Source: Octopus bimaculoides (taxonomy: Eukaryota). Taken from it: a stretch of DNA of 64,000 nucleotides. Where the stretch lies: positions 117,923,984 through 117,987,983 of the forward strand of contig NC_068984.1 of assembly GCF_001194135.2 (NCBI RefSeq), given 5' to 3'. Positions within the stretch are counted from its first letter, which is position 1, and each line of letters starts with the position of its first letter. A program made the translations under genes and the position numbers. The notes beneath the pieces are model-generated. The model worked only from the letters and a program-made list of their open reading frames with translations, was not told the origin of the DNA and ran no database searches. Below, in pieces: positions 2,945 through 63,625 of this stretch.

Positions 2945-3290
2945 GAGAAGGTATGCGGCTTAGTTAGGATGTTGACTCATGATCGTAAGATTGTGGTTTC
3001 ATATTCCTAGAGCAGGTGATATGCTGTGCTTTTAAACAAAACACTTCATTTCATGTGGCTCCAGTCCACTCAGCAAGCAAAACTGAGTAATCCTATGACG
3101 GACCAATCTATCTCTCAGTTTGGTGGTGAAGGAAGTTGATCAAGATGGTTTGGCAAATTACAGAATATAGTATTCACAATGAGTTTCATATTTACAACCC
3201 ATGAGATATGAAACATCAATGGGAAAATATATGCACCATGGAAACCAGGAAACCAGCCCTATGGGGCTATATGACTCAGGAAGACTCTAT
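2945..3290 (+). mobile_element. CORE tRNA-SINE, head A + tail Y, containing a 116-bp foreign insert
   Basis: Homology to 8698-8935 on both sides of 3104-3219. Confidence 0.8.
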
Positions 3291-3495
3291 ATATTATATA
3301 TGTATTTGTGTGTGTGTGTGTTTGTTGGTTTGTATGTACAATTAGCTTTACAGTCTTCAGAGAACAAGATAATAGTTGTTTGTGATGTTCATGCCTTCCA
3401 CAGAAGTGTTAGTGATGCATGGAAAATGGAGTAGATTTGGAGCCAAGTCAAATAACAAGACATAAGCTCAACAGAACCTCTATTCTAGGAAACTT

Positions 3496-4267: not shown

Positions 4268-5326
4268 CTCATGGCTACTGTACTATGGATAGTCATATAC
4301 ACATATTGACACAAGATCTAGCAAAGTAGCATAACACATTTATTAACTCAACCTGTTCTTTGTAACAACCATATCTTTCTCAATATATTCCTTAATATCA
4401 TTAACACTTTTACTGTGGAAATCAGATCCATCCCCTCAAAAGTTTATTACCCTTAACTGCGGAAAGCAGTTTTATATAACCCGATCTATCTTTTGATGAG
4501 GAATGTCATGTTTGAACCTATTTTATATCTCTTATTTTGTATCTTTTACTTGTTTCAGTCATTAGACTGTGGCCATGCTGGGGCACTGTCTCAAAAAGAT
4601 TTTAGTCGAACGAATCGACCACAGTACTTTTTTTAAAGTTTGGTACTTATTCAATCGGTTTCTTTTGCCAAACTACTTTTAAGATAAGTTCATTGACCCA
4701 ACATGACTTGAAGAAAATACCAATTCTATTTTTTTGATAGATATTTAATATCATTACTAGAATAACCTCAAAATTTAGTGTCACAGTTTTAGGGTTAACA
4801 CTTTTCTGACCATGCTTTTTAAAAGAACATACTACCAGTTCATTGCAGAGAATTCTCAAACTAAAGAATTATTTGAAAAGGCTAGTAAATTAATTGTAAC
4901 TAATTAATTATAATTAAACTGGTATTTACAATTTATCAATGATGATGATGATGAGGATGATAAAAGAACAAATATTTACAATTGGAACATCATATTGTAA
5001 TTTATGTAGAAACAATATATTGGTTGACATTTCAATTTTATAAAAGGAAAGAACATTTTAATACAAATGGCTCTGGTTAGGATGGCAAAACATGAGACCA
5101 AAGGGAAATCTTAGGTTGTGTGAAGGTATTTATATGGCTTAAAATAACCTCTGCTGATGTCATATAAAAGCACCCAGTACACTCTAAAATCGCCAGTGTT
5201 AAGAAGGGCATCCAGCTAAAATAGACATCTGGAGTCTGGTGCAACCCTCCAGCATGCCAGCTCCTGTCAAACAGTCCAACCCATGCCAGCATGGAAAATG
5301 GGTGTTAAATGATGATAATGTATGTA

Positions 5327-5359
<33 letters not shown>

Positions 5360-6689: not shown

Positions 6690-6848
6690 GCAGGAGTGGC
6701 TGTGTGGTAAGTAGCTTGCTAACAAACCACATGGCTCTGGGTTCAGTCCCACTGCATGGCACCTTGGGCAAGTGTCTTCTACGATAGCTTCAGGCTGAAC
6801 AAAGTCTTGTGAGTGGATTTGGTAGACGGAAACTGAAAGAAGCCCATC

Positions 6849-6850
<2 letters not shown>
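6690..6850 (+). mobile_element. SINE family A, 5' half
   Basis: Homology to 19640-20070. Confidence 0.85.
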
Positions 6851-6879
<29 letters not shown>

Positions 6880-7105
6880 TATANNNNNNNNNNNNNNNNN
6901 NNNNNNNNNNNNNNNNNNNNNNNNNNNNNNNNNNNNNNNNNNNNNNNNNNNNNNNNNNNNNNNNNNNNNNNNNNNNNNNNNNNNNNNNNNNNNNNNNNNN
7001 NNNNNNNNNNNNNNNNNNNNNNNNNNNNNNNNNNNNNNNNNNNNNNNNNNNNNNNNNNNNNNNNNNNNNNNNNNNNNNNNNNNNNNNNNNNNNNNNNNNN
7101 NNNNN

Positions 7106-7139
<34 letters not shown>

Positions 7140-7145
<6 letters not shown>

Positions 7146-7300
7146 GCTTCTTTTAGTTTCCATCTACCAAATCCACTTACAAGTGTTTGGTTGGCCTGAA
7201 GATATATTAGAAGACACTTGCCCATGGTTCCACAGAGTGGGACTGTACCCAGAACCATGCAATTGGGTAGCAAACTGCTTATGACATAGCCTTGACTACA
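7140..7300 (-). mobile_element. SINE family A, 5' half (inverted relative to 6690-6850)
   Basis: Homology to 19640-20070. Confidence 0.8.
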
Positions 7301-11985: not shown

Positions 11986-12811
11986 GCCAAACATGTATAG
12001 ATGCACACTTGGTTGTGTGGCAAAACATTTGCTTCGTGTCTTCTGCTGCTGCTCCAGGCTGACCAAAGCCTTGTGGAAGGATTTGGTAAATGGAAACTGA
12101 AAGAAACCCATTATATATCATCATTATCATCATGTAATGAATGGTTGACAGGAGCTGGTAAGCCTGAGAGTTTCTCAGGTTCCAGTTGTCTGTTTTTGCA
12201 TGGTTTCTACAGCTGGATGCCCTTCTAACATCAACCACTTTACAGAGTGTACTGGGTGCTTTTCATGTGGCACCAGCACCAGTGCTTTATACATGGCACC
12301 AGAATGTGTGTGTGTGTCTCCTTGTCATGATATCACATATCAGCTGTAAATGGGTGTCATACAAGCAGTGTCATTAATTCTAAATATTCCACAGCACATC
12401 TCACCATGGAACAAATATTACCTTACTTGGAAACAGGTGAGGGTTAGCAACAGAAAGAGCATCCAGCCATAGTAAATCCACCTCAAACTAAGCTCAACCC
12501 ATGCAAGTAAGGAAAAGTGTATATTAAAATGATGATGATAATGATATAAAGACATACACACACAAACACACACACACACATGCACAAAGGTATATAATGT
12601 TTTTAGAAATATTTCTTGATATCATCACAAGGTTTAAAAACAGATTATCTGAACTCCAAAATTTTTAATTAAATAAAAAGTGTCTTTCAAAATAAAAGGC
12701 AGTAGGGGAATTAACACAGACTTGATGGAAAGAAGTTTTTGTGTATGTGCATACATAGCTATCTAGTTACCCACCTAGCTACCTACATACATAAAAACAT
12801 AGATACACATA

Positions 12812-17085: not shown

Positions 17086-17667
17086 NNNNNNNNNNNNNNN
17101 NNNNNNNNNNNNNNNNNNNNNNNNNNNNNNNNNNNNNNNNNNNNNNNNNNNNNNNNNNNNNNNNNNNNNNNNNNNNNNNNNNNNNNNNNNNNNNNNNNNN
17201 NNNNNNNNNNNNNNNNNNNNNNNNNNNNNNNNNNNNNNNNNNNNNNNNNNNNNNNNNNNNNNNNNNNNNNNNNNNNNNNNNNNNNNNNNNNNNNNNNNNN
17301 NNNNNNNNNNNNNNNNNNNNNNNNNNNNNNNNNNNNNNNNNNNNNNNNNNNNNNNNNNNNNNNNNNNNNNNNNNNNNNNNNNNNNNNNNNNNNNNNNNNN
17401 NNNNNNNNNNNNNNNNNNNNNNNNNNNNNNNNNNNNNNNNNNNNNNNNNNNNNNNNNNNNNNNNNNNNNNNNNNNNNNNNNNNNNNNNNNNNNNNNNNNN
17501 NNNNNNNNNNNNNNNNNNNNNNNNNNNNNNNNNNNNNNNNNNNNNNNNNNNNNNNNNNNNNNNNNNNNNNNNNNNNNNNNNNNNNNNNNNNNNNNNNNNN
17601 NNNNNNNNNNNNNNNNNNNNNNNNNNNNNNNNNNNNNNNNNNNNNNNNNNNNNNNNNNNNNNNNNNN

Positions 17668-18489: not shown

Positions 18490-19570
18490 AATTGATATTG
18501 TTAAAGTTTCTTTCGAACCTTTCTCAGTCAACACCTGCCGGAAAGATATAACCATGAAGGGAGTTCCAGAAGTCCAATATTCCAAGAAGAAAAGATTGGG
18601 TGTAGGGGGTCAGTGCAGTGCCTGGGTGTGTTGGACACAACAAGAATGATGGAAAGAAGAGAGAGACAGAAGGAATAGGAGTGTCTGAGTGAAAGTGTCA
18701 TGAACTCAGTCAGGTTTGAAGAGCAGAGGTCATTACAGTAATAGGAAAAAAAGCTGAGAAAGGAAACAGTACACCTGTAGGTCAGAGGCTGGAGAGCATT
18801 TGTGAGTAATTTTATGCCAATTAGTATACTTGAGATGCAGCCAAGGATGTCTATCATCATCATCATCATCATCGTTTAACGTCCGCTTTCCATGCTAGCA
18901 TGGGTTGGACGATTTGACTGAGGACTGGTGAAACCAGATGGCTACACCAGGCTCCACTCTGATTTGGCAGAGTTTCTACAGCTGGATGCCCTTCCTAACG
19001 CCAACCACTCAGAGAGTGTAGTGGGTGCTTTTACGTGCCACTGGCATGAAGGCCAGTCAGGTGGTACTGGCAACGGCCACGCTCAAAATGGTGTGGCCGT
19101 TGCCAGTACCGCCTGACTGGCCTTCATGCGGATGGCACGTAAAAGCACCCACTACACTCTCGGAGTGGTTGGCATTAGGAAGGGCGTGTGAAGTAATATC
19201 ACTGTCTCAGATATGTAAGAGCTGAACTCCATTATGGGCCTTATCTGAACTTTGATAGAGTATCAATATTTATTAGCAGCCAAGATATCTCCAGACCATG
19301 AAGAGAAGTACTGGTCACTGGATTGTGATCCTAGCTATGTTAAAGTTGTACTCTTGTACTTCTTTACAATAAAGAGTTAAACACCCTAACCACTGAGCCG
19401 CATGTCTTCAGTGATAGTGAAACCCAACAACTGGAGTGACTTCAAGGGTTCCAGTCAATAACTGCCCATGATTAAGAAGGGTGGGGTGTGATGATGTTTT
19501 GGTTACTGGTTGTCCTCAAGGAAAGATGTAATGATCGTGACAGGAGTTCTTTGATCATGTGTGTGCATAA
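18490..19570 (-). mobile_element. CR1/L2-type LINE 3' RT fragment, interrupted at 18853-19187
   Basis: VQIRPIMEFSSYI (about 19220-19260) and, after the insertion, LQPLTYRCTVSFLSFFSYYCNDLCSSNL. Both are typical of the C-terminal RT region of CR1/L2-group ORF2. Confidence 0.7.
18853..19187 (-). mobile_element. (GAT)n-tailed retroposon with GGAAGGGCATCCAGC motif; 5' end folded back as an inverted duplication
   Basis: Tail GGAAAGCGGACGTTAAACGATGATGATG on the minus strand. Relatives occur at 5140-5320, 12140-12300, 12305-12545, 15725-16030, 28200-28395, 31920-32145 and 35728-36150. Confidence 0.8.
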
Positions 19571-21256: not shown

Positions 21257-21319
<63 letters not shown>

Positions 21320-21745
21320 CCTTTCTACTATAGGCACAAGGCCTGAAGTTTTTGGTGGAGAGAGGAGTAATTAATACTCAACTGGTACTTATTTTATTGA
21401 CCCCAAAAGGATGAAAAGCAAAGTTGACCCTGGCAGAATTTGAACTCAGAACATAAAGCAGATGAAATGCTGCTAAGCATTTTGCCTGGCATCATAACAA
21501 TTCTGCCAGCTCACTGCCTTATATAATACTTTCTACTATAGGCACAAGACCTGAAATTTGGTGGGAGGAGTTACGTTGATTACATCAACCCCAGTACCCA
21601 ACTGGCACTTAATTTATCGACCCCGAAAAGATAAAAGGCAAAGTCAACCTCAGCGGAATTTGAACTCAGAACATAGTGACAGGCAAAACACAGCTAAGCA
21701 ATTCGTCCAGCGTGCTAATGATTCTGCCAGCTCACCGCCTTACTG
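20835..21745. mobile_element. Cluster of family M SINEs (20835-21045 +; 21318-21520 -; 21528-21742 -)
   Basis: Shared TTTGAACTCAGAAC and GCCTTGTGCC motifs. Other copies lie at 10420-10531, 13537-13752, 18285-18481, 22005-22205, 33290-33672, 34660-34860, 43460-43540 and 44330-44472. Confidence 0.85.
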
Positions 21746-23816: not shown

Positions 23817-24042
23817 TAAGGCTGCAAGATGGCAGGCTTGTTAGAATGCCGGGCAAAATGCTTAGCAGTATATCGTCTGCTGTTACACTCTGAGTTCAAA
23901 TTCCACTGAGGTTAATTTTGCCTTTCATCCTTTCGGGATCGAAAAGTTAAGTACCAGTTGAGTACTGGGGTCGATGTAATCGATTATCCCCCTCTCCCCA
24001 AATTTCAGGCCTTGTGCCTAGAGTAGAAAAGATTATTATTAC

Positions 24043-24045
<3 letters not shown>
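23817..24045 (+). mobile_element. tRNA-SINE family M (AAGGCGGTGAGCTGGCAG head; central GACTTTGCCTTTCATCCTTTCGGGGTCGAT block; (ATT)n tail)
   Basis: Representative full copy of the most abundant family in the window. The central block resembles, from memory, the conserved domain of Meta/Sauria-type SINEs (needs a Dfam check). Confidence 0.85.
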
Positions 24046-24078
<33 letters not shown>

Positions 24079-24079
24079 C

Positions 24080-24696
24080 ATCCAGTAGTCTTATTTTTAT
24101 CATGTGCTTTCACTGCACTACCAAGCCCAGCTCTGTGTGCCTTGAGTATGTGCTGTGGTTTGTTGTGATGATCTCATTTTTACTGTATTGAAAGTGTTTT
24201 AGATAGGATGTGTGCAGTACCTAGTAGTGCTATTTCTTTTTTTGTATATTATATATATTTGTTTGTCCTGGTGTTTTTGTTATGTATTTGTCTAAATATT
24301 TTTTAATCATACCTAATGCACCTACTATGATAGGAATTATTTCTGTTTTTATACTCCACATTCAAGTTACCTCTATTTCCAGGTCTTTGTATTTTGAATA
24401 TTTCTCCATTTTTTTTAAGGAAACATTGTCATCTGTTGGTATTGATACATCAATTAGAAAAAAAAATTTTCTTGATGATCACTGACAACTATATCTGGCC
24501 TATTGATCTTAATTTCTCTACCTGTGTGTATTGGCAGATGCCAGAGTATGGTTGCTTTCTCATTTTCTGTGAACTTTTCTGGCGTGTGCCTATACCATCT
24601 TTTTCCTGTTGTTATTCCATAGTGCTGGCACAGCGTCCACTGTATATAGATCCCAACACTGTCATGTATGTGAATATATTCCTTCTTAGCTAGGAC

Positions 24697-27801: not shown

Positions 27802-28585
27802 NNNNNNNNNNNNNNNNNNNNNNNNNNNNNNNNNNNNNNNNNNNNNNNNNNNNNNNNNNNNNNNNNNNNNNNNNNNNNNNNNNNNNNNNNNNNNNNNNNN
27901 NNNNNNNNNNNNNNNNNNNNNNNNNNNNNNNNNNNNNNNNNNNNNNNNNNNNNNNNNNNNNNNNNNNNNNNNNNNNNNNNNNNNNNNNNNNNNNNNNNNN
28001 NNNNNNNNNNNNNNNNNNNNNNNNNNNNNNNNNNNNNNNNNNNNNNNNNNNNNNNNNNNNNNNNNNNNNNNNNNNNNNNNNNNNNNNNNNNNNNNNNNNN
28101 NNNNNNNNNNNNNNNNNNNNNNNNNNNNNNNNNNNNNNNNNNNNNNNNNNNNATATATATATATATATATACCCATCAAGTTGAGCAAAACCACAGTCAT
28201 GACAGATACAGGTGCCATGCAAATGGCACCTGTGCTGGTGGCACATAAAAGCACACATTACAATTTCAGAGTGGTTTGCATTATGAAGGGCAACCAGCCA
28301 TAGAAACAATACCAAATCATACTGGAGTCTGGTACAGCCTTCCAGCTTACCAGCATGGACAACGGATGTTAAATGATGATGATGATGATGATGATATATA
28401 TAGTATGGAGATAGAATTATAATCCAAACTGTGTCCATGTGAAGCATATTTGTATATTCCAGTACTCCAAAATTGTATGTATTATTTGATTCTCTGTCTG
28501 AAGAATTTCTAATATAAGGTATCTTACATGTTTTTCATATCACAAGAAGTAAAAGGGATTAATATATATGTATATAAGTGTGTGT

Positions 28586-35369: not shown

Positions 35370-36270
35370 ACTGCTGTATTTGACTCCAGTTCTGAACTGA
35401 TTTTCAGTTACATCAACTCCAGAAGGATGAAAAGCAACATGGATCTCATCAGTGTTTGAGCTCAGTACTTAAAGCAACATAACTAAAATACTACAGAACA
35501 CTTTTTAACAGTACTTAACTGGTGCTCTATTATATCAACCCTTGAAGGATGAAAAGCATTTTTGACCTCAATTGTGTTTGTACTCAGAACTAAAAGACTC
35601 ATAACTACAACGCCGTAGGACACTTTGAACAATTATGCTATGTCCTAATCTAATCTAATCAATAGTTGAATTCAGAACTTAAAGGGATATAACTGAAATA
35701 CTAGAGAACATTTTTTTTTTATCGAAATCAAAAATGGAAATTGTAGCTGTGGCCAATGCCAGTGCTGCTTGATTGGCTCCCATACATGCGTGGGTCGTTG
35801 TCAGTGCCGCCTGACTGGCTCTTCGTGCCGGTAGCACGTAAAAAGCACCATCCGAACGTGGCCGATGCTAGCATCCCACCCTGCCCCGACTGGCTCCTGT
35901 GCCGGTAACACGTAAAAAGCACAATCCGAATGTGGCCGATGCCAGTGCCGCCTGACTGGCTCCCGTGCCGGTGGCACGTAAAAGCACCCACTACACTCTC
36001 AAAGTGGTTGACGTTAGGAAGGTCATCCAGCTGTAGAAACATTACCAGATCAGAATGGTGTTTGATGCAGCCTCCTGGCTTGCCAGTCCCCAGTCAAACC
36101 GTCCGACCCATGTCAGCATGGAAAACGGACGTTAAACAATGAAGACGATGATGATGAAGGATGAAAAGCATTTATGACCTTAGCTGTATTTGAAATCAGC
36201 ATCTAAAGGCTCATAACTTAAGTACTGTAGGACATCTTTTTGTCCCAGCACTCTGGCAATTCTGCCATGG
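35370..36270. repeat. Diverged tandem copies of a ~120-bp family-M-like segment, interrupted by the 35728-36150 retroposon
   Basis: GAAGGATGAAAAGCA..GA(C/T)CT..TGTTTG..CTCAG at about 35421, 35545 and 36157. Confidence 0.55.
35728..36150 (+). mobile_element. (GAT)n-tailed retroposon with internal tandem repeats of about 65-70 bp
   Basis: Unit GTGGCCGATGCCAGTGCCGCCTGACTGGCTCCCGTGCCGGTGGCACGTAAAAGCAC repeated about 3-4 times before the GGAAGG.CATCCAGC segment and the GTTAAAC..GATGATGATG tail. Confidence 0.75.
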
Positions 36271-36666
36271 TCTAATCTAGTTTTTATGTAATCAGAGATT
36301 TTAATGCATATCTACTTCACTACGAAGTACTGTATAGTGCAACACAACCACAGTACAGACAAGCATCCTTGCTTTCGACATACAGCTTGCCTAGAATGCA
36401 ACAGAAATAATTGATAAAGAAAAAAAAAGAAAGAAAACACCTCACCTTTGTGAGTAACAGATGTAATACACACCTGAATGTATCAGTTGCAGGTGTGTTA
36501 GTTCTAGCATGACAGTTTAACCCCTTTAAAGGGTTCCTATCTGTTTTCTTGCCTTTCTTTCTTTCTTCTGATTTTACGAGAGTGGTGGTAAGCGGGAGCA
36601 CTATAGGAGGTGACTGGTACGTGTCCTTCAACTTCTCCCCTCTCCCACTCTCTCTCACTTTCTCTT

Positions 36667-36715
<49 letters not shown>

Positions 36716-38015
36716 TTCTCTTTCTCACTTTCTCTTGTTTATTTTATTTCTTCAAAGAAGTGTTTTTATAAGATCAAAGAAATAGTAGAGACAGTATGCG
36801 TGTGACTCTAGCGACAAATATGGTTGGATGCTAGCGTACAATTATACATGTAAGACAACTAATATATTTAACTTATTTTAATGGTTAAATATAGTTGTAC
36901 ACAGAAATGTTTACATTGAATGAAGACGTGGATATATAAACTCCGGTGTTAAATCTCTCTTTTTTAAATGTATAAATTTGAAACTTTGGATATATAAACA
37001 AGGAGAACGATCCTTAAGGAATCTAATTAATGATTTTTTGAGGGGAAATCTTATGCTATATTGGTAACGATTCCTGCAACTGCATTTAATTGAACAATGT
37101 AATCATTACTTCAATTTAAAATGCAGAGCAATCCTCAGCTGCACAAAGACAGAATTTAATTAAATTAGAACAGATGGACACATTAGTATAATAATACCTA
37201 AAATCTGCCAACAAGTTAAGGAGATAGACAAAGAACATGTTGCCTCTACTACAACATAGAAGTTAAATAAATTGTCAAGAAGACTCTTCCTGTCACTGAT
37301 TTTATTTGTTTTTCAATGGGGGTCAGTTTTAATTTATAGACTAGTTTATCAAACCTTGTATATCTAAGGCTGAGAAAAATAAAGGGCATTATCTATTTGG
37401 GGTAGGGTTGAGAGAGCAGACGGAAATCATAGTTGGTATAGTCATAAAAAATAATGAGGTTTGGTAAAGGAAAACTTAAAACAAGATGTTGGCTGACAAC
37501 TAAGATGGGTGTCGCCCACAAGCAGACCATTGATAATGAAACAGGGGAAGTCTTATTATGTAGTACCATAGTTAAATGTTTTAAAACAATGTTGCTGTAT
37601 TGTATACAGAAAAAGTTTATGGCTATTCAGAGGGTTATTAAGAAGAATATATTAACAAAAGGATAGAAATTTATGGATACTTTTGAGTATATACCAAACT
37701 TTTTACCACAATAGAAGGAAGAAAAGAAATTATTCAGAAATAGTTTAATATTTATACATATTGTACACTTAAATACTAACTCATCAGATGGTATCTGTGA
37801 ATATTAATTAATAGGTATATACTGGCGTTAATAAAGAAGCATTCAGGTAAAAAGAACATTCTAATTATATATTAAAATTATATTCTAAGCATTTTTTTAT
37901 ATGTGGTGAATATGACGCATAGTTTTATATAAGCTAAGTATGAATTTATTGCGATACAAAGATTAGCTTAATATTTTATGAATAAATATTCATAAAAAAT
38001 TAAGCTAATCTTTGT

Positions 38016-38060
<45 letters not shown>

Positions 38061-39360: not shown

Positions 39361-41059
39361 GCAAGGGAAATGCTCCACATGATAGCTCGATTTGTTAAAA
39401 AACATAGCTGTTAAATCACCCTCAAATCACACCTTATCGTAAAAAAAAAACAGAAAAAAAATTCGTAAAGGAATAAGTGGAAATGGAATTTTGATTTGTG
39501 CCGTTTCCGCCAGTAGTCAGTCTTAGATAGCCATATACAAACCTACACACACACACACACACACAGAAGGAAAATTACAGACTGGGTGATCATAACAGGA
39601 ATGTCTGGTTACAGGTGTACTGGATCAGAATTTGACCTGAGATTAAACTGTATCACCCAGAAAAGAACATCGAAAACACGTGTTCGTCACCTCATTACTC
39701 GCCCTTGTCGCAATAAAAGCAGACATTATTATATAGTCAGTCAATGTGTTTATTAATTAATAAATAGTAATAATAATAATAATTATTATTATTACTATTA
39801 ATGTTATTATTATTATCGTTATCAATAGTTGTATCTTTATCAGTAATAACAGAAGCGGTTATAACACGGTTGAGTCGTCGGAAACTGGGTTTTTGGAATC
39901 TTTACAGCCAAATTCATTGACAATAATGATTTAAAAAACAAAACCTCGATAGAATTACTTTAGTCCTTCATCCCTTTACATTAAGGTTACGTTCAACAAG
40001 GTATAAAATACACAAGAAACAAATAGATAAATAAATAAACAGCCCAGTGTTGTTTTTTTTTTTCCTTCTCCATGATTTTCGGATTCATGTGAAGAACATA
40101 TGAGTGAGAGGTGTCAACCGTTCCAATCAACCATGCATAATATACAAGTCTCGCAGTTACATAAATTATAGTTCAATTTGACTGTTGTTCTTTCGCGTGC
40201 GTGCGTGCGTGCGTGCATGTGTGATTGTGAGGTNNNNNNNNNNNNNNNNNNNNNNNNNNNNNNNNNNNNNNNNNNNNNNNNNNNNNNNNNNNNNNNNNNN
40301 NNNNNNNNNNNNNNNNNNNNNNNNNNNNNNNNNNNNNNNNNNNNNNNNNNNNNNNNNNNNNNNNNNNNNNNNNNNNNNNNNNNNNNNNNNNNNNNNNNNN
40401 NNNNNNNNNNNNNNNNNNNNNNNNNNNNNNNNNNNNNNNNNNNNNNNNNNNNNNNNNNNNNNNNNNNNNNNNNNNNNNNNNNNNNNNNNNNNNNNNNNNN
40501 NNNNNNNNNNNNNNNNNNNNNNNNNNNNNNNNNNNNNNNNNNNNNNNNNNNNNNNNNNNNNNNNNNNNNNNNNNNNNNNNNNNNNNNNNNNNNNNNNNNN
40601 NNNNNNNNNNNNNNNNNNNNNNNNNNNNNNNNNNNNNNNNNNNNNNNNNNNNNNNNNNNNNNNNNNNNNNNNNNNNNNNNNNNNNNNNNNNNNNNNNNNN
40701 NNNNNNNNNNNNNNNNNNNNNNNNNNNNNNNNNNNNNNNNNNNNNNNNNNNNNNNNNNNNNNNNNNNNNNNNNNNNNNNNNNNNNNNNNNNNNNNNNNNN
40801 NNNNNNNNNNNNNNNNNNNNNNNNNNNNNNNNNNNNNNNNNNNNNNNNNNNNNNNNNNNNNNNNNNNNNNNNNNNNNNNNNNNNNNNNNNNNNNNNNNNN
40901 NNNNNNNNNNNNNNNNNNNNNNNNNNNNNNNNNNNNNNNNNNNNNNNNNNNNNNNNNNNNNNNNNNNNNNNNNNNNNNNNNNNNNNNNNNNNNNNNNNNN
41001 NNNNNNNNNNNNNNNNNNNNNNNNNNNNNNNNNNNNNNNNNNNNNNNNNNNNNNNNNNN

Positions 41060-46059: not shown

Positions 46060-47560
<1,501 letters not shown>

Positions 47561-50956: not shown

Positions 50957-51688
50957 NNNNNNNNNNNNNNNNNNNNNNNNNNNNNNNNNNNNNNNNNNNN
51001 NNNNNNNNNNNNNNNNNNNNNNNNNNNNNNNNNNNNNNNNNNNNNNNNNNNNNNNNNNNNNNNNNNNNNNNNNNNNNNNNNNNNNNNNNNNNNNNNNNNN
51101 NNNNNNNNNNNNNNNNNNNNNNNNNNNNNNNNNNNNNNNNNNNNNNNNNNNNNNNNNNNNNNNNNNNNNNNNNNNNNNNNNNNNNNNNNNNNNNNNNNNN
51201 NNNNNNNNNNNNNNNNNNNNNNNNNNNNNNNNNNNNNNNNNNNNNNNNNNNNNNNNNNNNNNNNNNNNNNNNNNNNNNNNNNNNNNNNNNNNNNNNNNNN
51301 NNNNNNNNNNNNNNNNNNNNNNNNNNNNNNNNNNNNNNNNNNNNNNNNNNNNNNNNNNNNNNNNNNNNNNNNNNNNNNNNNNNNNNNNNNNNNNNNNNNN
51401 NNNNNNNNNNNNNNNNNNNNNNNNNNNNNNNNNNNNNNNNNNNNNNNNNNNNNNNNNNNNNNNNNNNNNNNNNNNNNNNNNNNNNNNNNNNNNNNNNNNN
51501 NNNNNNNNNNNNNNNNNNNNNNNNNNNNNNNNNNNNNNNNNNNNNNNNNNNNNNNNNNNNNNNNNNNNNNNNNNNNNNNNNNNNNNNNNNNNNNNNNNNN
51601 NNNNNNNNNNNNNNNNNNNNNNNNNNNNNNNNNNNNNNNNNNNNNNNNNNNNNNNNNNNNNNNNTATATGCTCAGAAAACGCACACAT

Positions 51689-56869: not shown

Positions 56870-57128
56870 GGTAAGGTAAAATTTCCTTTTCAACTTATAC
56901 TGACTCATAAGGGCCGGTTTCCCAGTTTTATGGCATATATATTCCCCACCTGGATGGGATGCCGTTCCGTCGCAGGATTACTCACTTTTGCCAGTTGAGT
57001 GGACTGGAGCAACGTGAAGTGGAGTGTTTTGCTCAAGAACACAATGCATCACCCGGTCCGGGAATCGAAACCACAATCTTAAGAACATGAGTTCAACACC
57101 CTAACCACTAAGCCATGCACCTTCCACT
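56870..57128 (-). mobile_element. CORE tRNA-SINE, head A + tail Y
   Basis: Homology to 8698-8935; inserted in the RTE remnant. Confidence 0.85.
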
Positions 57129-57375: not shown

Positions 57376-57625
57376 TGGAAGCATGTGGCTTAGTGGTTCG
57401 GATGTTGGACTCATAATCGTAAGATTGTGGTTTCAGTTCCTAGATCGGGCGACGCGTTGCGATCTTGAGCAAAACACTTCACTTCACATTACTCCAATCG
57501 ACTCAGCTGACAAAAATAAGTAATCCTGCGACGGACCGGCGTCCATCCTGTAGGGAATATATGCACCACAGAAACCAGGAAACCGGCCTCATGAATCTGT
57601 ATGACTCGGGAAGGACCTTTATCCT
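57376..57625 (+). mobile_element. CORE tRNA-SINE, head A + tail Y
   Basis: Homology to 8698-8935. Confidence 0.85.
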
Positions 57626-63054: not shown

Positions 63055-63625
63055 TAGGGGTCGGCGAACCGGGCTAAATTATCCTAAGTGGGATAAAAAT
63101 GAAATTCTTGGGGGTAATGAGAACTCATCTGACAAATAAAATTATATATAAAACGTGGTCCTTGTTACAACAGAAATTTTTCTTCTGGCATGAGGAAGCA
63201 GTCAAAAAGTTGCTGCCTTTTGCAATAACCTACTTTTGCAAACAAGGATTTTCCACTCTAATAAATATAAAAACAAAACTGAGTAATCGATTGGACCCCG
63301 AAGACTGTATCCAAATTGCTCTGGCGTCAAAAGGGCCCAATTTTGATGTAATTGCTACGAAGATAAAACAACGTCGTTTCTCCAAAACCTGTAGTGAAAA
63401 AGTTTCTAGAAAAATCCTCTTGTTTCATAATGAGGATATTGATTTATTTTATCGCATTTGTTTTATATTTTTTATATTTATAATTGTATTCTCCTTATAA
63501 ATAGATTCCATAAACTTTTTGAATTCTAGGAATCTATGATTTTTTCTATTTCAAATCAAGGGGGTAACATCGGTGTAAATAAATATATTTGGGGATAAAT
63601 GGTTAAAAAAGTTCCCCGGTCACTG
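63055..63625 (+). mobile_element. Non-autonomous hAT (Charlie/Buster-like) element carrying the transposase C-terminal dimerisation region
   Basis: ORF 63099-63500 contains KKLLPFAITYFCKQGFSTLINIKTKLSNRLDPEDCIQIAL. Termini are TAGGGGTCGGCGAACC...AAGTTCCCCGGTCACTG, with an 8-bp TSD ATCTAATA (63047) / GTCTAATA (63626). Confidence 0.85.

What the first reader, a model, noticed from the sequence alone, without database searches (positions are those of the whole stretch)
18988..19185. 93-bp-stem foldback hairpin inside the junctophilin intron
Seen: the left arm 18988-19080 and right arm 19093-19185 are reverse complements (6 mismatches in 93 bp) around a 12-nt loop GCTCAAAATGGT. The hairpin forms the 5' end of a (GAT)n-tailed retroposon, and other family copies in the window (e.g. 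35728-36150) lack the inversion. The inverted arm duplicates the same segment, which is not what ordinary twin priming gives. Established: coleoid cephalopods have very extensive ADAR A-to-I editing and expanded miRNA repertoires. Inference: a cDNA snap-back/template switch or two head-to-head insertions created a long dsRNA in a neural/muscle pre-mRNA, a strong editing substrate or hairpin small-RNA source.
Basis: partly seen in the sequence, partly recalled or inferred. Interest (0 to 1): 0.7.

Follow-up and report, generated by a model that had tools for sequence, protein, structure and literature searches.

The report
Snap-back hairpin on an octopus retroposon
A short mobile-element copy in an octopus junctophilin intron folded back on itself, most likely while it was being inserted; this left a real 93-bp hairpin that should form double-stranded RNA, but it looks like a one-off by-product of a known copying error, not a new kind of element.

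Summary
Arms 18988-19080 and 19093-19185 are reverse complements (87/93) around the 12-nt loop GCTCAAAATGGT. The RNA folds at about -193 to -199 kcal/mol (z about -22 to -24).

The left arm, the loop and 18874-18987 form one continuous 5'-truncated copy of a (GAT)n-tailed retroposon on the minus strand. The right arm is an inverted copy of that element's own first 93 nt and has no tail. The turn needs only 1-3 nt of microhomology (GTG/CAC).

Twelve other family copies (4 in the window, 8 in Octopus vulgaris) lack the fold-back.

The six arm differences split 3:3 against outgroup copies, and four of the six sit at ancestral CpG sites. That is an aged, real duplication, not an assembly palindrome.

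Best reading: the first-strand cDNA snapped back on itself during target-primed reverse transcription. This 5'-junction class has been described experimentally for R2 insertions. Classical twin priming, two independent insertions and an artefact fit worse. A later DNA-level fold-back repair is not excluded.

The site lies about 27 kb downstream of junctophilin exon 1 on the gene's sense strand, so it is probably intronic. Editing and small-RNA production are plausible but untested. Interest is low to moderate.

The parts
18853..18873 (-). Retroposon 3' tail: (GAT)7 on the minus strand, read as (ATC)7 on the + strand.
   Evidence: Read directly. The same tail is present on family copies in the window and in O. 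vulgaris.
18874..18987 (-). Unique 3' body of the retroposon that is not duplicated. It includes the conserved palindrome CCATGCTAGCATGG (18890-18903), 16 nt before the tail.
   Evidence: Aligns with all family copies. 84% identity to the copy at 35932-36157.
18988..19080 (-). Left arm: native sense sequence of the element, made of the last 5' tandem unit plus the first ~35 nt of the unique body.
   Evidence: It is continuous with 18874-18987 in the family alignment.
19081..19092 (-). Loop: still native element sequence, the 3' end of the preceding tandem unit. On the minus strand it reads ACCATTTTGAGC, against the family consensus ACCATCCGAGC.
   Evidence: Alignment with O. vulgaris and window copies. 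Native sequence can be traced to 19093/19094, leaving 1-3 nt of microhomology (GTG 19093-19095 / CAC 19078-19080).
19093..19185 (+). Right arm: inverted duplicate of 18988-19080, i.e. element sense on the + strand. It has no tail and no 3' body of its own.
   Evidence: It shares the private variant CTTCATGC with the left arm.
19186..19202 (.). 17 nt of unknown origin (GTGTGAAGTAATATCAC) between the right arm and the candidate target-site duplication. It may be junction filler or simply flank.
   Evidence: Not family sequence. Its resemblance to 18801-18810 is at chance level (P about 0.065).
18848..18852 (.). Candidate target-site duplication TGTCT, left copy. The right copy is at 19203-19207. 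Weak evidence.
   Evidence: The chance frequency of this 5-mer in a 34-nt window of nearby sequence is 0.039.
19203..19207 (.). Candidate target-site duplication TGTCT, right copy. Weak evidence.
35728..36157 (+). Reference copy of the same family without inversion: about four tandem 62-74-bp units, then the unique body and a degenerate (GAT)n tail.
46212..46596 (-). Junctophilin exon 1 (start codon to GTAAGT donor). It defines the transcribed strand.
   Evidence: ORF. Homologues are named junctophilin and carry Pfam PF02493 MORN. Donor site read.

Best explanation
The hairpin is a snap-back 5' junction of a single retroposon insertion.

Proposed steps. A (GAT)n-tailed, SINE-like RNA was reverse-transcribed at a nick in the + strand after 18852 (target-primed reverse transcription). 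The first-strand cDNA, which is the + strand from 18853 rightwards, was extended only to about 19093-19095, leaving a 5'-truncated copy. Its 3' end (...ATGGTG) then folded back onto CAC at 19078-19080 and was extended for 93 nt using the cDNA itself as template. That produced 19093-19185. The end was then joined to the upstream target DNA.

What is shown and what is inferred. The structure is shown. The order of events is inferred.

Later history. Both arms have since decayed independently, about 3 substitutions each and mostly at CpG sites. No pairing-restoring (compensatory) change is seen, so there is no sign of selection for the structure.

Expected consequence. The element lies on the sense strand about 27 kb downstream of junctophilin exon 1. 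The pre-mRNA should therefore contain a 93-bp nearly perfect duplex with 2 G-U pairs, 2 A-C mismatches, 1 U-C and 1 C-C. In an octopus this is an expected ADAR hyper-editing substrate. That consequence is inferred, not tested. It is most likely a neutral by-product.
For: Geometry. Left arm, loop and 3' body form one continuous family copy. The loop matches the end of the upstream tandem unit in other copies, and native sequence overlaps the inverted arm by 1-3 nt. The right arm has no tail or 3' body, and nothing family-like lies beyond 19185. The arms are each other's closest relatives (93.5%, against at most 87% to any other copy) and share the private variant CTTCATGC. None of 12 other copies has a fold-back. 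With O. vulgaris copies as outgroup, the six differences split 3:3, and four are at ancestral CpG sites. The hairpin lies inside a 5.1-kb contig (17668-22759), 1.3 kb from the nearest gap. Snap-back, in which the cDNA 3' end primes synthesis complementary to the cDNA before the 5' junction forms, is an observed junction class for R2 insertions in human cells (PMC11371274; PMC11331408). Fold energies. Gene context. Octopus dsRNA and hyper-editing: PMC5625713.
Against: No clear target-site duplication brackets the composite. There is only a 5-nt TGTCT, 17 nt beyond the arm (P about 0.04). Most other family copies also lack clear duplications, so this test has no power. The final DNA structure is the same as that of a later fold-back repair at a double-strand break, or of a twin-priming variant using two cDNAs. 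The two substitutions shared by both arms could have arisen after insertion but before duplication, which would favour a later DNA event. The partner LINE and its reverse transcriptase were not identified. No independent assembly, orthologous locus or RNA data could be reached.
Confidence: 0.6

Rival explanations
1. Post-insertion DNA fold-back. An ordinary, longer or equally truncated copy suffered a double-strand break or a replication template switch near 19093. The resected + strand 3' end folded back on microhomology and was extended 93 nt by a DNA polymerase. It was then joined to the other end, with loss of any upstream element sequence.
For: It gives the same final structure and the same 1-3 nt microhomology. 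Fold-back templated inverted duplications at breaks are documented, though most are about 5-34 bp (PMC11724301 abstract). Both arms share two private substitutions that could be post-insertion changes predating the duplication. There is no convincing target-site duplication around the composite.
Against: The break would have to coincide with the 5' end of the retroposon copy, or the rest of the element would have to be deleted cleanly. No element sequence lies beyond 19185. The 93-nt extension is longer than most of the reported repair events.
Confidence: 0.17
2. Twin-priming variant. The second-strand 3' end (minus strand at 19186) primed a second cDNA on a retroposon RNA at ...GGAAGGGC. Both cDNAs ran to about the same 5' position and were joined through the GTG/CAC microhomology.
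For: The minus strand from 19185 to 19093 has cDNA polarity, so the topology is compatible. Twin priming is the standard explanation for 5'-inverted LINE-mediated insertions (PMC11702581; PMC2837659).
Against: Both cDNAs would have to copy the same 93 nt, whereas observed twin-priming junctions overlap by 1-10 bp. There is no microhomology between the putative primer end (...CACAC) and the RNA at the outer junction 19185/19186. It needs two RNAs or strand displacement, plus coincident stops within 12 nt.
Confidence: 0.1
3. Two independent head-to-head insertions of the same family, the right-hand one later losing its 3' body and tail by deletion.
For: The genome is dense in these elements. A genuine head-to-head pair of related tailed retroposons exists at 12118-12547.
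Against: Both copies would have to be 5'-truncated at the same unit boundary, 12 nt apart, and share private variants. The second would then need a deletion removing about 135 nt of body plus the tail. The genuine pair at 12 kb keeps both tails and has more than 200 nt between the copies.
Confidence: 0.05
4. Assembly or library artefact: a palindromic contig or chimeric fold-back read.
For: The window is a gapped short-read scaffold with 12 N runs totalling 4401 N. Another 'palindrome' spans a gap at 6698-7291.
Against: Artefactual palindromes reuse the same reads or k-mers, so their arms are identical. Here the arms differ at six sites, split 3:3 against outgroups and biased to CpG, as expected of real decay. 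The hairpin is 1.3 kb from the nearest gap.
Confidence: 0.03
5. A selected functional hairpin: a source of miRNA or hairpin-derived small RNAs, or a regulatory ADAR-binding element of junctophilin.
For: Very stable stem. Sense orientation in a neural/muscle gene. Sub-threshold resemblance to generic miRNA hairpin models.
Against: No Rfam family reaches its gathering score. The stem is about three times longer than a canonical pre-miRNA stem. All six substitutions weaken pairing or turn it into wobble pairs, and none is compensatory. Inverted repeats within a few hundred bases of each other, and palindromes with short loops, are common in the octopus sequence examined.
Confidence: 0.04

Closest known systems
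Snap-back 5' junctions of target-primed (R2) insertions (Zhang et al. 2024, PMC11371274; PMC11331408)
   Same: A sense copy joined at its tail to the target. At its 5' end it continues directly into the reverse complement of its own cDNA, made when the cDNA 3' end primes on the cDNA before the 5' junction forms. Extra unmapped bases can occur at the junction.
   Different: Those are engineered R2 insertions into rDNA in human cells, read from sequencing reads. This is a natural, old germ-line insertion of a non-autonomous (GAT)n-tailed element in an octopus, with an unidentified LINE partner. The mechanism here is inferred from the end product only.
L1 twin-priming 5' inversions (Ostertag and Kazazian 2001, cited from my own knowledge; data in PMC11702581)
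   Same: A retroposon insertion whose 5' part is inverted relative to its tailed 3' part, with microhomology at the internal junction.
   Different: In twin priming the inverted part comes from RNA upstream of the direct part, with only 1-10 bp of overlap or deletion. Here the inverted part duplicates the same 93 nt, and there is no microhomology at the outer junction.
Inverted SINE pairs (primate inverted-repeat Alus) and palindromic repeats (Xenopus Harbinger) as ADAR hyper-editing substrates (PMC5625713)
   Same: Repeat-derived intramolecular dsRNA inside a pre-mRNA. This is the class of structure that accounts for most hyper-editing, and it is especially abundant in octopus.
   Different: Those duplexes come from two separate insertions or from an intrinsically palindromic transposon. 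Here one insertion event supplies both arms with a 12-nt loop. Editing of this locus has not been tested.
Fold-back templated inverted duplications at DNA double-strand breaks (PMC11724301)
   Same: A 3' end folds back on microhomology and is extended, creating a short inverted duplication with a small loop.
   Different: Those are DNA-repair events independent of reverse transcription, mostly about 5-34 bp. Here the turn coincides with the 5' end of a retroposon copy.
Octopus tRNA-derived SINEs OK, OR1 and OR2 (Ohshima and Okada 1994, cited in PMC4824008)
   Same: Short, abundant, non-autonomous retroposons of octopus with simple-repeat tails.
   Different: No tRNA-like head was found in this family. 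Its 5' part is a variable number of 62-74-bp tandem units. I could not compare it with the published OK/OR sequences, so its name is unknown.

Membership tests
Snap-back 5' junction of a target-primed retroposon insertion | Sense copy with its 3' tail abutting target DNA | tested here: met
   (GAT)7 at 18853-18873 on the minus strand, followed by non-family flank.
Snap-back 5' junction of a target-primed retroposon insertion | At the 5' end of the sense copy, the sequence continues as the reverse complement of the adjacent part of the same copy | tested here: met
   The 19093-19185 arm is the reverse complement of 18988-19080, 87/93. Native sequence runs through the loop to 19093/19094.
Snap-back 5' junction of a target-primed retroposon insertion | Inverted segment lacks its own 3' end and tail, so it was not an independent insertion | tested here: met
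   Nothing family-like lies beyond 19185.
Snap-back 5' junction of a target-primed retroposon insertion | One target-site duplication brackets the whole composite | tested here: inconclusive
   Only TGTCT at 18848-18852 and 19203-19207 (chance about 0.04). An 11-nt approximate repeat is at chance level (P = 0.065). Other family copies also mostly lack clear duplications.
Snap-back 5' junction of a target-primed retroposon insertion | Formed during reverse transcription rather than by later DNA repair | not testable with these tools
   Needs an orthologous or polymorphic site, or genome-wide junction statistics. No cephalopod genome could be searched by DNA.
L1-type twin-priming 5' inversion | Inverted and direct segments come from adjacent RNA regions, with at most a few bases of overlap or deletion | tested here: not met
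   Complete 93-nt overlap, against 1-10 bp in PMC11702581.
L1-type twin-priming 5' inversion | Microhomology between the target primer and the RNA at the outer junction (frequent, not obligatory) | tested here: not met
   At 19185/19186 the flank ...GTGTG / ...CACAC does not match element sequence downstream of GGAAGGGC.
SINE in the strict sense (pol III-derived head) | 5' head derived from tRNA, 5S or 7SL RNA with internal promoter boxes | tested here: not met
   No tRNA was found by ARAGORN. No Rfam hit at gathering score or in E-value mode on 35500-36300. The longest copies start with tandem units. Truly full-length copies may not have been sampled.
(GAT)n-tailed dispersed retroposon family of Octopus | Multiple dispersed copies sharing the 3' body and tail, with variable 5' truncation | tested here: met
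   Five window copies and eight O. vulgaris copies.
Canonical animal pre-miRNA | Match to a curated miRNA family, and a stem of roughly 30-35 bp | tested here: not met
   Best match is MIR538 at 63 bits against a gathering score of 100. All others are also below threshold. The stem is 93 bp.
Canonical animal pre-miRNA | Discrete mature and star small-RNA reads | not testable with these tools
   No small-RNA data available.
ADAR hyper-editing substrate | Long, nearly perfect intramolecular duplex | tested here: met
   In minus-strand RNA, 87 Watson-Crick pairs, 2 G-U pairs and 4 mismatches.
ADAR hyper-editing substrate | Located in a transcribed region | tested here: inconclusive
   About 27 kb downstream of junctophilin exon 1 on the sense strand, with no later exon in the window. 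Transcription itself was not observed.
ADAR hyper-editing substrate | Clusters of A-to-G RNA-DNA differences | not testable with these tools
   No RNA-seq was reachable. Look-ups of ORFs spanning the hairpin found no assembled contigs.

The most novel reading that the evidence does not exclude
Snap-back could be a frequent outcome for this family's partner reverse transcriptase. The family would then have seeded the octopus genome with many self-complementary short-loop hairpins inside introns. That would contribute measurably to the unusually high dsRNA potential and ADAR hyper-editing load reported for octopus. This locus would be one visible example. Apart from the flagged copy, 0 of 12 copies show a fold-back, so the data allow a frequency of up to roughly 20% but give no positive support.
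Probability: 0.07. Interest if true: 0.6.

Novelty: new member of a known kind. Interest (0 to 1): 0.2.

Why it matters
The finding gives a clean natural example of a snap-back 5' junction, with loop, microhomology and later decay all readable. This junction class has so far been documented mainly in engineered R2 insertions. It also shows that one retroposition event can create a dsRNA-forming hairpin with a 12-nt loop inside a gene. For the biology of junctophilin or of cephalopod RNA editing, it matters only if the hairpin turns out to be transcribed, edited or processed. Octopus introns contain many other inverted repeats, so this one is not special as a substrate class. Its main use is as a template for a genome-wide count of snap-back copies.

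Tried and rejected
1. Independent copies of this locus. Exact-product look-ups of three ORFs spanning the hairpin or its flank found nothing.

2. Family copies in public DNA collections. A 20-nt degenerate core pattern gave two chance bacterial-type matches in metagenome contigs (L001 and L002, read) and none in the GTDB genomes. No cephalopod genome can be searched by DNA with these tools.

3. A protein-space detour worked. A spurious antisense ORF of the element hit two O. vulgaris 'hypothetical proteins'. Their loci gave 40 kb of O. vulgaris sequence with eight family copies.

4. Orthologous junctophilin intron in O. vulgaris. The exon-1 search returned only short proteins and no Octopus gene model.

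5. tRNA or other small-RNA head, and known miRNA families. None was found.

6. A possible second inversion at 12.2-12.5 kb turned out to be two separate tailed copies.

7. Target-site duplications. TGTCT and an 11-nt approximate repeat are both near chance. A survey of nine copies showed that the family rarely has clear duplications.

8. A named family. The SINEBase and MetaSINE papers give no sequence to compare.

9. I considered and dropped the idea that the reverse transcriptase stalled at the mini-hairpin GTGCCGGTGGCAC of the upstream unit. The stop is about 10 nt short of it.

Full report
OBSERVATION

The reported inverted repeat is present exactly as described. The arms are 18988-19080 and 19093-19185, 93 nt each, 94% complementary, with 12 nt between them. 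A base-by-base comparison gives six mismatches (18999/19174, 19011/19162, 19041-43/19130-32, 19062/19111). The loop is GCTCAAAATGGT, and complementarity stops abruptly outside the arms.

As RNA the 236-nt region folds into one long stem on either strand. The minus strand gives -193.4 kcal/mol (z = -22.3) and the plus strand -198.8 kcal/mol (z = -24.2). None of 200 dinucleotide shuffles comes close. Among palindromes with a short loop that are not simple-sequence repeats, it is by far the strongest in the 64 kb.

WHAT THE ARMS ARE

On the + strand, (ATC)7 at 18853-18873 is followed by sequence that recurs elsewhere in the window, when read on the minus strand. The recurrences are at 35728-36157, 28200-28394, about 5152-5328 and 12118-12305.

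A spurious antisense ORF of the element matched two 'hypothetical proteins' of Octopus vulgaris. Fetching those loci (L003 and L004, assembly GCA_951406725.2) gave eight more copies.

The family has four parts:
- a variable number (about 3-6) of 62-74-bp tandem units, GTGGCCG...GTGCCGGTGGCACGTAAAAAGCACCATCCGAGC;
- a unique body of about 190 bp;
- a conserved palindrome, CCATGCTAGCATGG;
- a (GAT)n tail.

No tRNA, 5S or 7SL head was detected. I therefore call it a SINE-like, tailed, non-autonomous retroposon. I could not assign a published name.

ANATOMY OF THE HAIRPIN COPY

Read on the minus strand, the stretch from 19092 down to 18853 is one uninterrupted, 5'-truncated family copy.
- The left arm is the last tandem unit plus the first ~35 nt of the unique body.
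- The 12-nt loop is not foreign. ACCATTTTGAGC corresponds to the consensus end of the preceding unit, ACCATCCGAGC.
- Native sequence can be followed to 19093/19094. It overlaps the end of the inverted arm by 1-3 nt (GTG at 19093-19095 against CAC at 19078-19080).
- The right arm is the reverse complement of the element's own first 93 nt. It has no 3' body and no tail.
- Nothing family-like lies beyond 19185.
- The arms are each other's closest relatives: 93.5% identity, against at most 87% to any other copy. They share the private variant CTTCATGC where the other copies have CTCCGTGC.

REAL OR ARTEFACT, AND HOW OLD

The other copies serve as outgroups for the six arm differences. Four of the six sites are ancestrally CpG. 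Three changes fall on the left arm and three on the right. That is about 3.2% per arm.

This symmetric, CpG-biased decay is what two real DNA segments accumulate after a duplication. Palindromes produced by an assembler or by chimeric reads reuse the same reads and would have identical arms. The hairpin also lies inside a 5.1-kb contig (17668-22759), 1.3 kb from the nearest N run. I rate an artefact at about 3%.

None of the six changes is compensatory. All weaken pairing or turn it into wobble pairs. There is therefore no sign of selection to keep the stem.

MECHANISM OF ORIGIN

The + strand is continuous through target, (ATC)n, antisense body, loop and sense arm. That is the product expected under the following sequence of events.
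1. The first-strand cDNA, primed at the nick after 18852, stopped at about 19093-19095.
2. It folded back on 1-3 nt of microhomology.
3. It copied itself for 93 nt.
4. It was then joined to the upstream target.

Twin priming fits worse.
- Its junction overlaps are 1-10 bp (PMC11702581), not 93.
- It would require two cDNAs copying the same stretch and stopping within 12 nt of each other.
- There is no microhomology at the outer junction 19185/19186.

Two independent insertions are unlikely.
- A target-primed insertion must carry the tail.
- Both copies would need identical truncation points.
- The genuine head-to-head pair at 12118-12547 shows what that situation looks like: each copy has its own tail, and more than 200 nt separate the two copies.

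A later DNA-level fold-back at a break would give the same end product and cannot be excluded (PMC11724301). It would require the break to coincide with the 5' end of the copy.

A target-site duplication bracketing the composite would settle the question, but the evidence is at chance level.
- TGTCT occurs at 18848-18852 and 19203-19207, with P about 0.04.
- An 11-nt approximate repeat has P = 0.065.
- Other family copies mostly lack clear duplications too.

My estimates are: snap-back at insertion about 0.6, later fold-back about 0.17, twin-priming variant about 0.1.

IS IT A FAMILY TRAIT?

None of the four other window copies or the eight O. vulgaris copies has a fold-back. It is a one-off among the copies I could see. 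The sample is small, and the flagged copy itself cannot be counted towards a frequency.

CONTEXT AND LIKELY CONSEQUENCE

The ORF at 46596-46212 on the minus strand is junctophilin exon 1. It encodes MORN repeats, its homologues are named junctophilin, and it ends at a GTAAGT donor. No further MORN exon is in the window.

The hairpin, in sense orientation, therefore lies about 27 kb into what is presumably intron 1. The next exon is not in the window, so this is an inference.

In the minus-strand transcript the stem would have 87 Watson-Crick pairs, 2 G-U pairs, 2 A-C mismatches (adenosines at 19042 and 19062), 1 U-C and 1 C-C. Long, nearly perfect intramolecular duplexes are the main hyper-editing substrates. 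Octopus shows the strongest hyper-editing signal and an unusually high dsRNA potential among the animals surveyed (PMC5625713). From my own knowledge, adenosines opposite C are favoured ADAR targets.

Editing here is thus a reasonable prediction, but I could not test it.

It is not a recognisable miRNA. No Rfam family reaches its gathering score. The sub-threshold hits are generic hairpin matches.

The substrate class is also not rare. The window and the two O. vulgaris loci contain many other inverted repeats within a few hundred bases of each other.

VERDICT

The 'two insertions' alternative is disfavoured. The RNA-level half (editing, small RNAs) remains untested.

The finding is a new natural member of a known kind of retroposition by-product. 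It is most likely neutral. Interest is 0.2.

The most novel reading still open is that snap-back is frequent for this family and contributes to the dsRNA load of octopus. I give it a probability of about 0.07.

Noticed in passing
L003 3682-4496 (Octopus vulgaris OX597840.1): A 137-bp tandem array (5.9 copies, 97% matches) built from the 3' half of the same retroposon, including its (GAT)n tail, next to a fuller copy at 4365-4594. A satellite-like array appears to have arisen from a retroposon 3' end.
   Followed up: partly
window 6698-7291: Two copies of a different SINE lie tail-to-tail across an N gap (6884-7105), scoring as a 297-nt 'palindrome'. This SINE has a tRNA-like head and (TA)n tails. 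The arrangement may be real or a scaffolding artefact.
   Followed up: partly
window 56957-57115 and 57386-57544: A 159-nt inverted repeat (83%) with 270 nt between the arms. Both arms carry tRNA-like head sequence facing each other. It could be an inverted SINE pair or a MITE-like element, and is another potential dsRNA former upstream of junctophilin.
   Followed up: no
window 21270-21742 and 23817-24081: Inverted repeats of 82 nt (94%) and 220 nt (77%), 2.1-2.6 kb apart in the same presumed intron. Not examined.
   Followed up: no
window 12118-12305 (minus) and about 12330-12547 (plus): Two related triplet-repeat-tailed retroposons sit head-to-head, each with its own tail. This is a natural control for what two independent insertions look like.
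   Followed up: yes
L003 16574-16978: A ~400-bp palindrome in the O. vulgaris long-read assembly: (TA)n(TG)n, a ~75-nt unique arm, a short loop, the inverted arm, then (CA)n(TA)n. The microsatellite flanks are inverted as well. Its origin was not examined.
   Followed up: partly
window 37953-38018: A small AT-rich perfect-type hairpin (arms of about 31 nt, 4-nt loop), directly followed by (CT)n(TA)n and a 10-N gap.
   Followed up: no
window 35748-35990; L004 10140-10360 (minus) and 3025-3310: The 5' part of the (GAT)n family is a variable number of 62-74-bp tandem units, each containing the mini-palindrome GTGCCGGTGGCAC, instead of a tRNA-like head. This is an unusual build for a 'SINE'.
   Followed up: partly
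window 18890-18903 and the equivalent position in all copies: A conserved palindrome, CCATGCTAGCATGG, lies 16 nt upstream of the (GAT)n tail. It is a candidate 3' stem-loop recognised by the partner LINE's reverse transcriptase. This was seen in alignments only.
   Followed up: no
window 63099-63500 (+): A 133-aa ORF that, by eye, resembles the C-terminal dimerisation region of a hAT-type transposase. It was not searched.
   Followed up: no
window, 12 N runs (e.g. 17086-17667, 40234-41059, 50957-51664): 4401 N in 12 gaps, nearly all flanked by (TA)n or (CA)n microsatellites. The source is a short-read scaffold assembly.
   Followed up: yes
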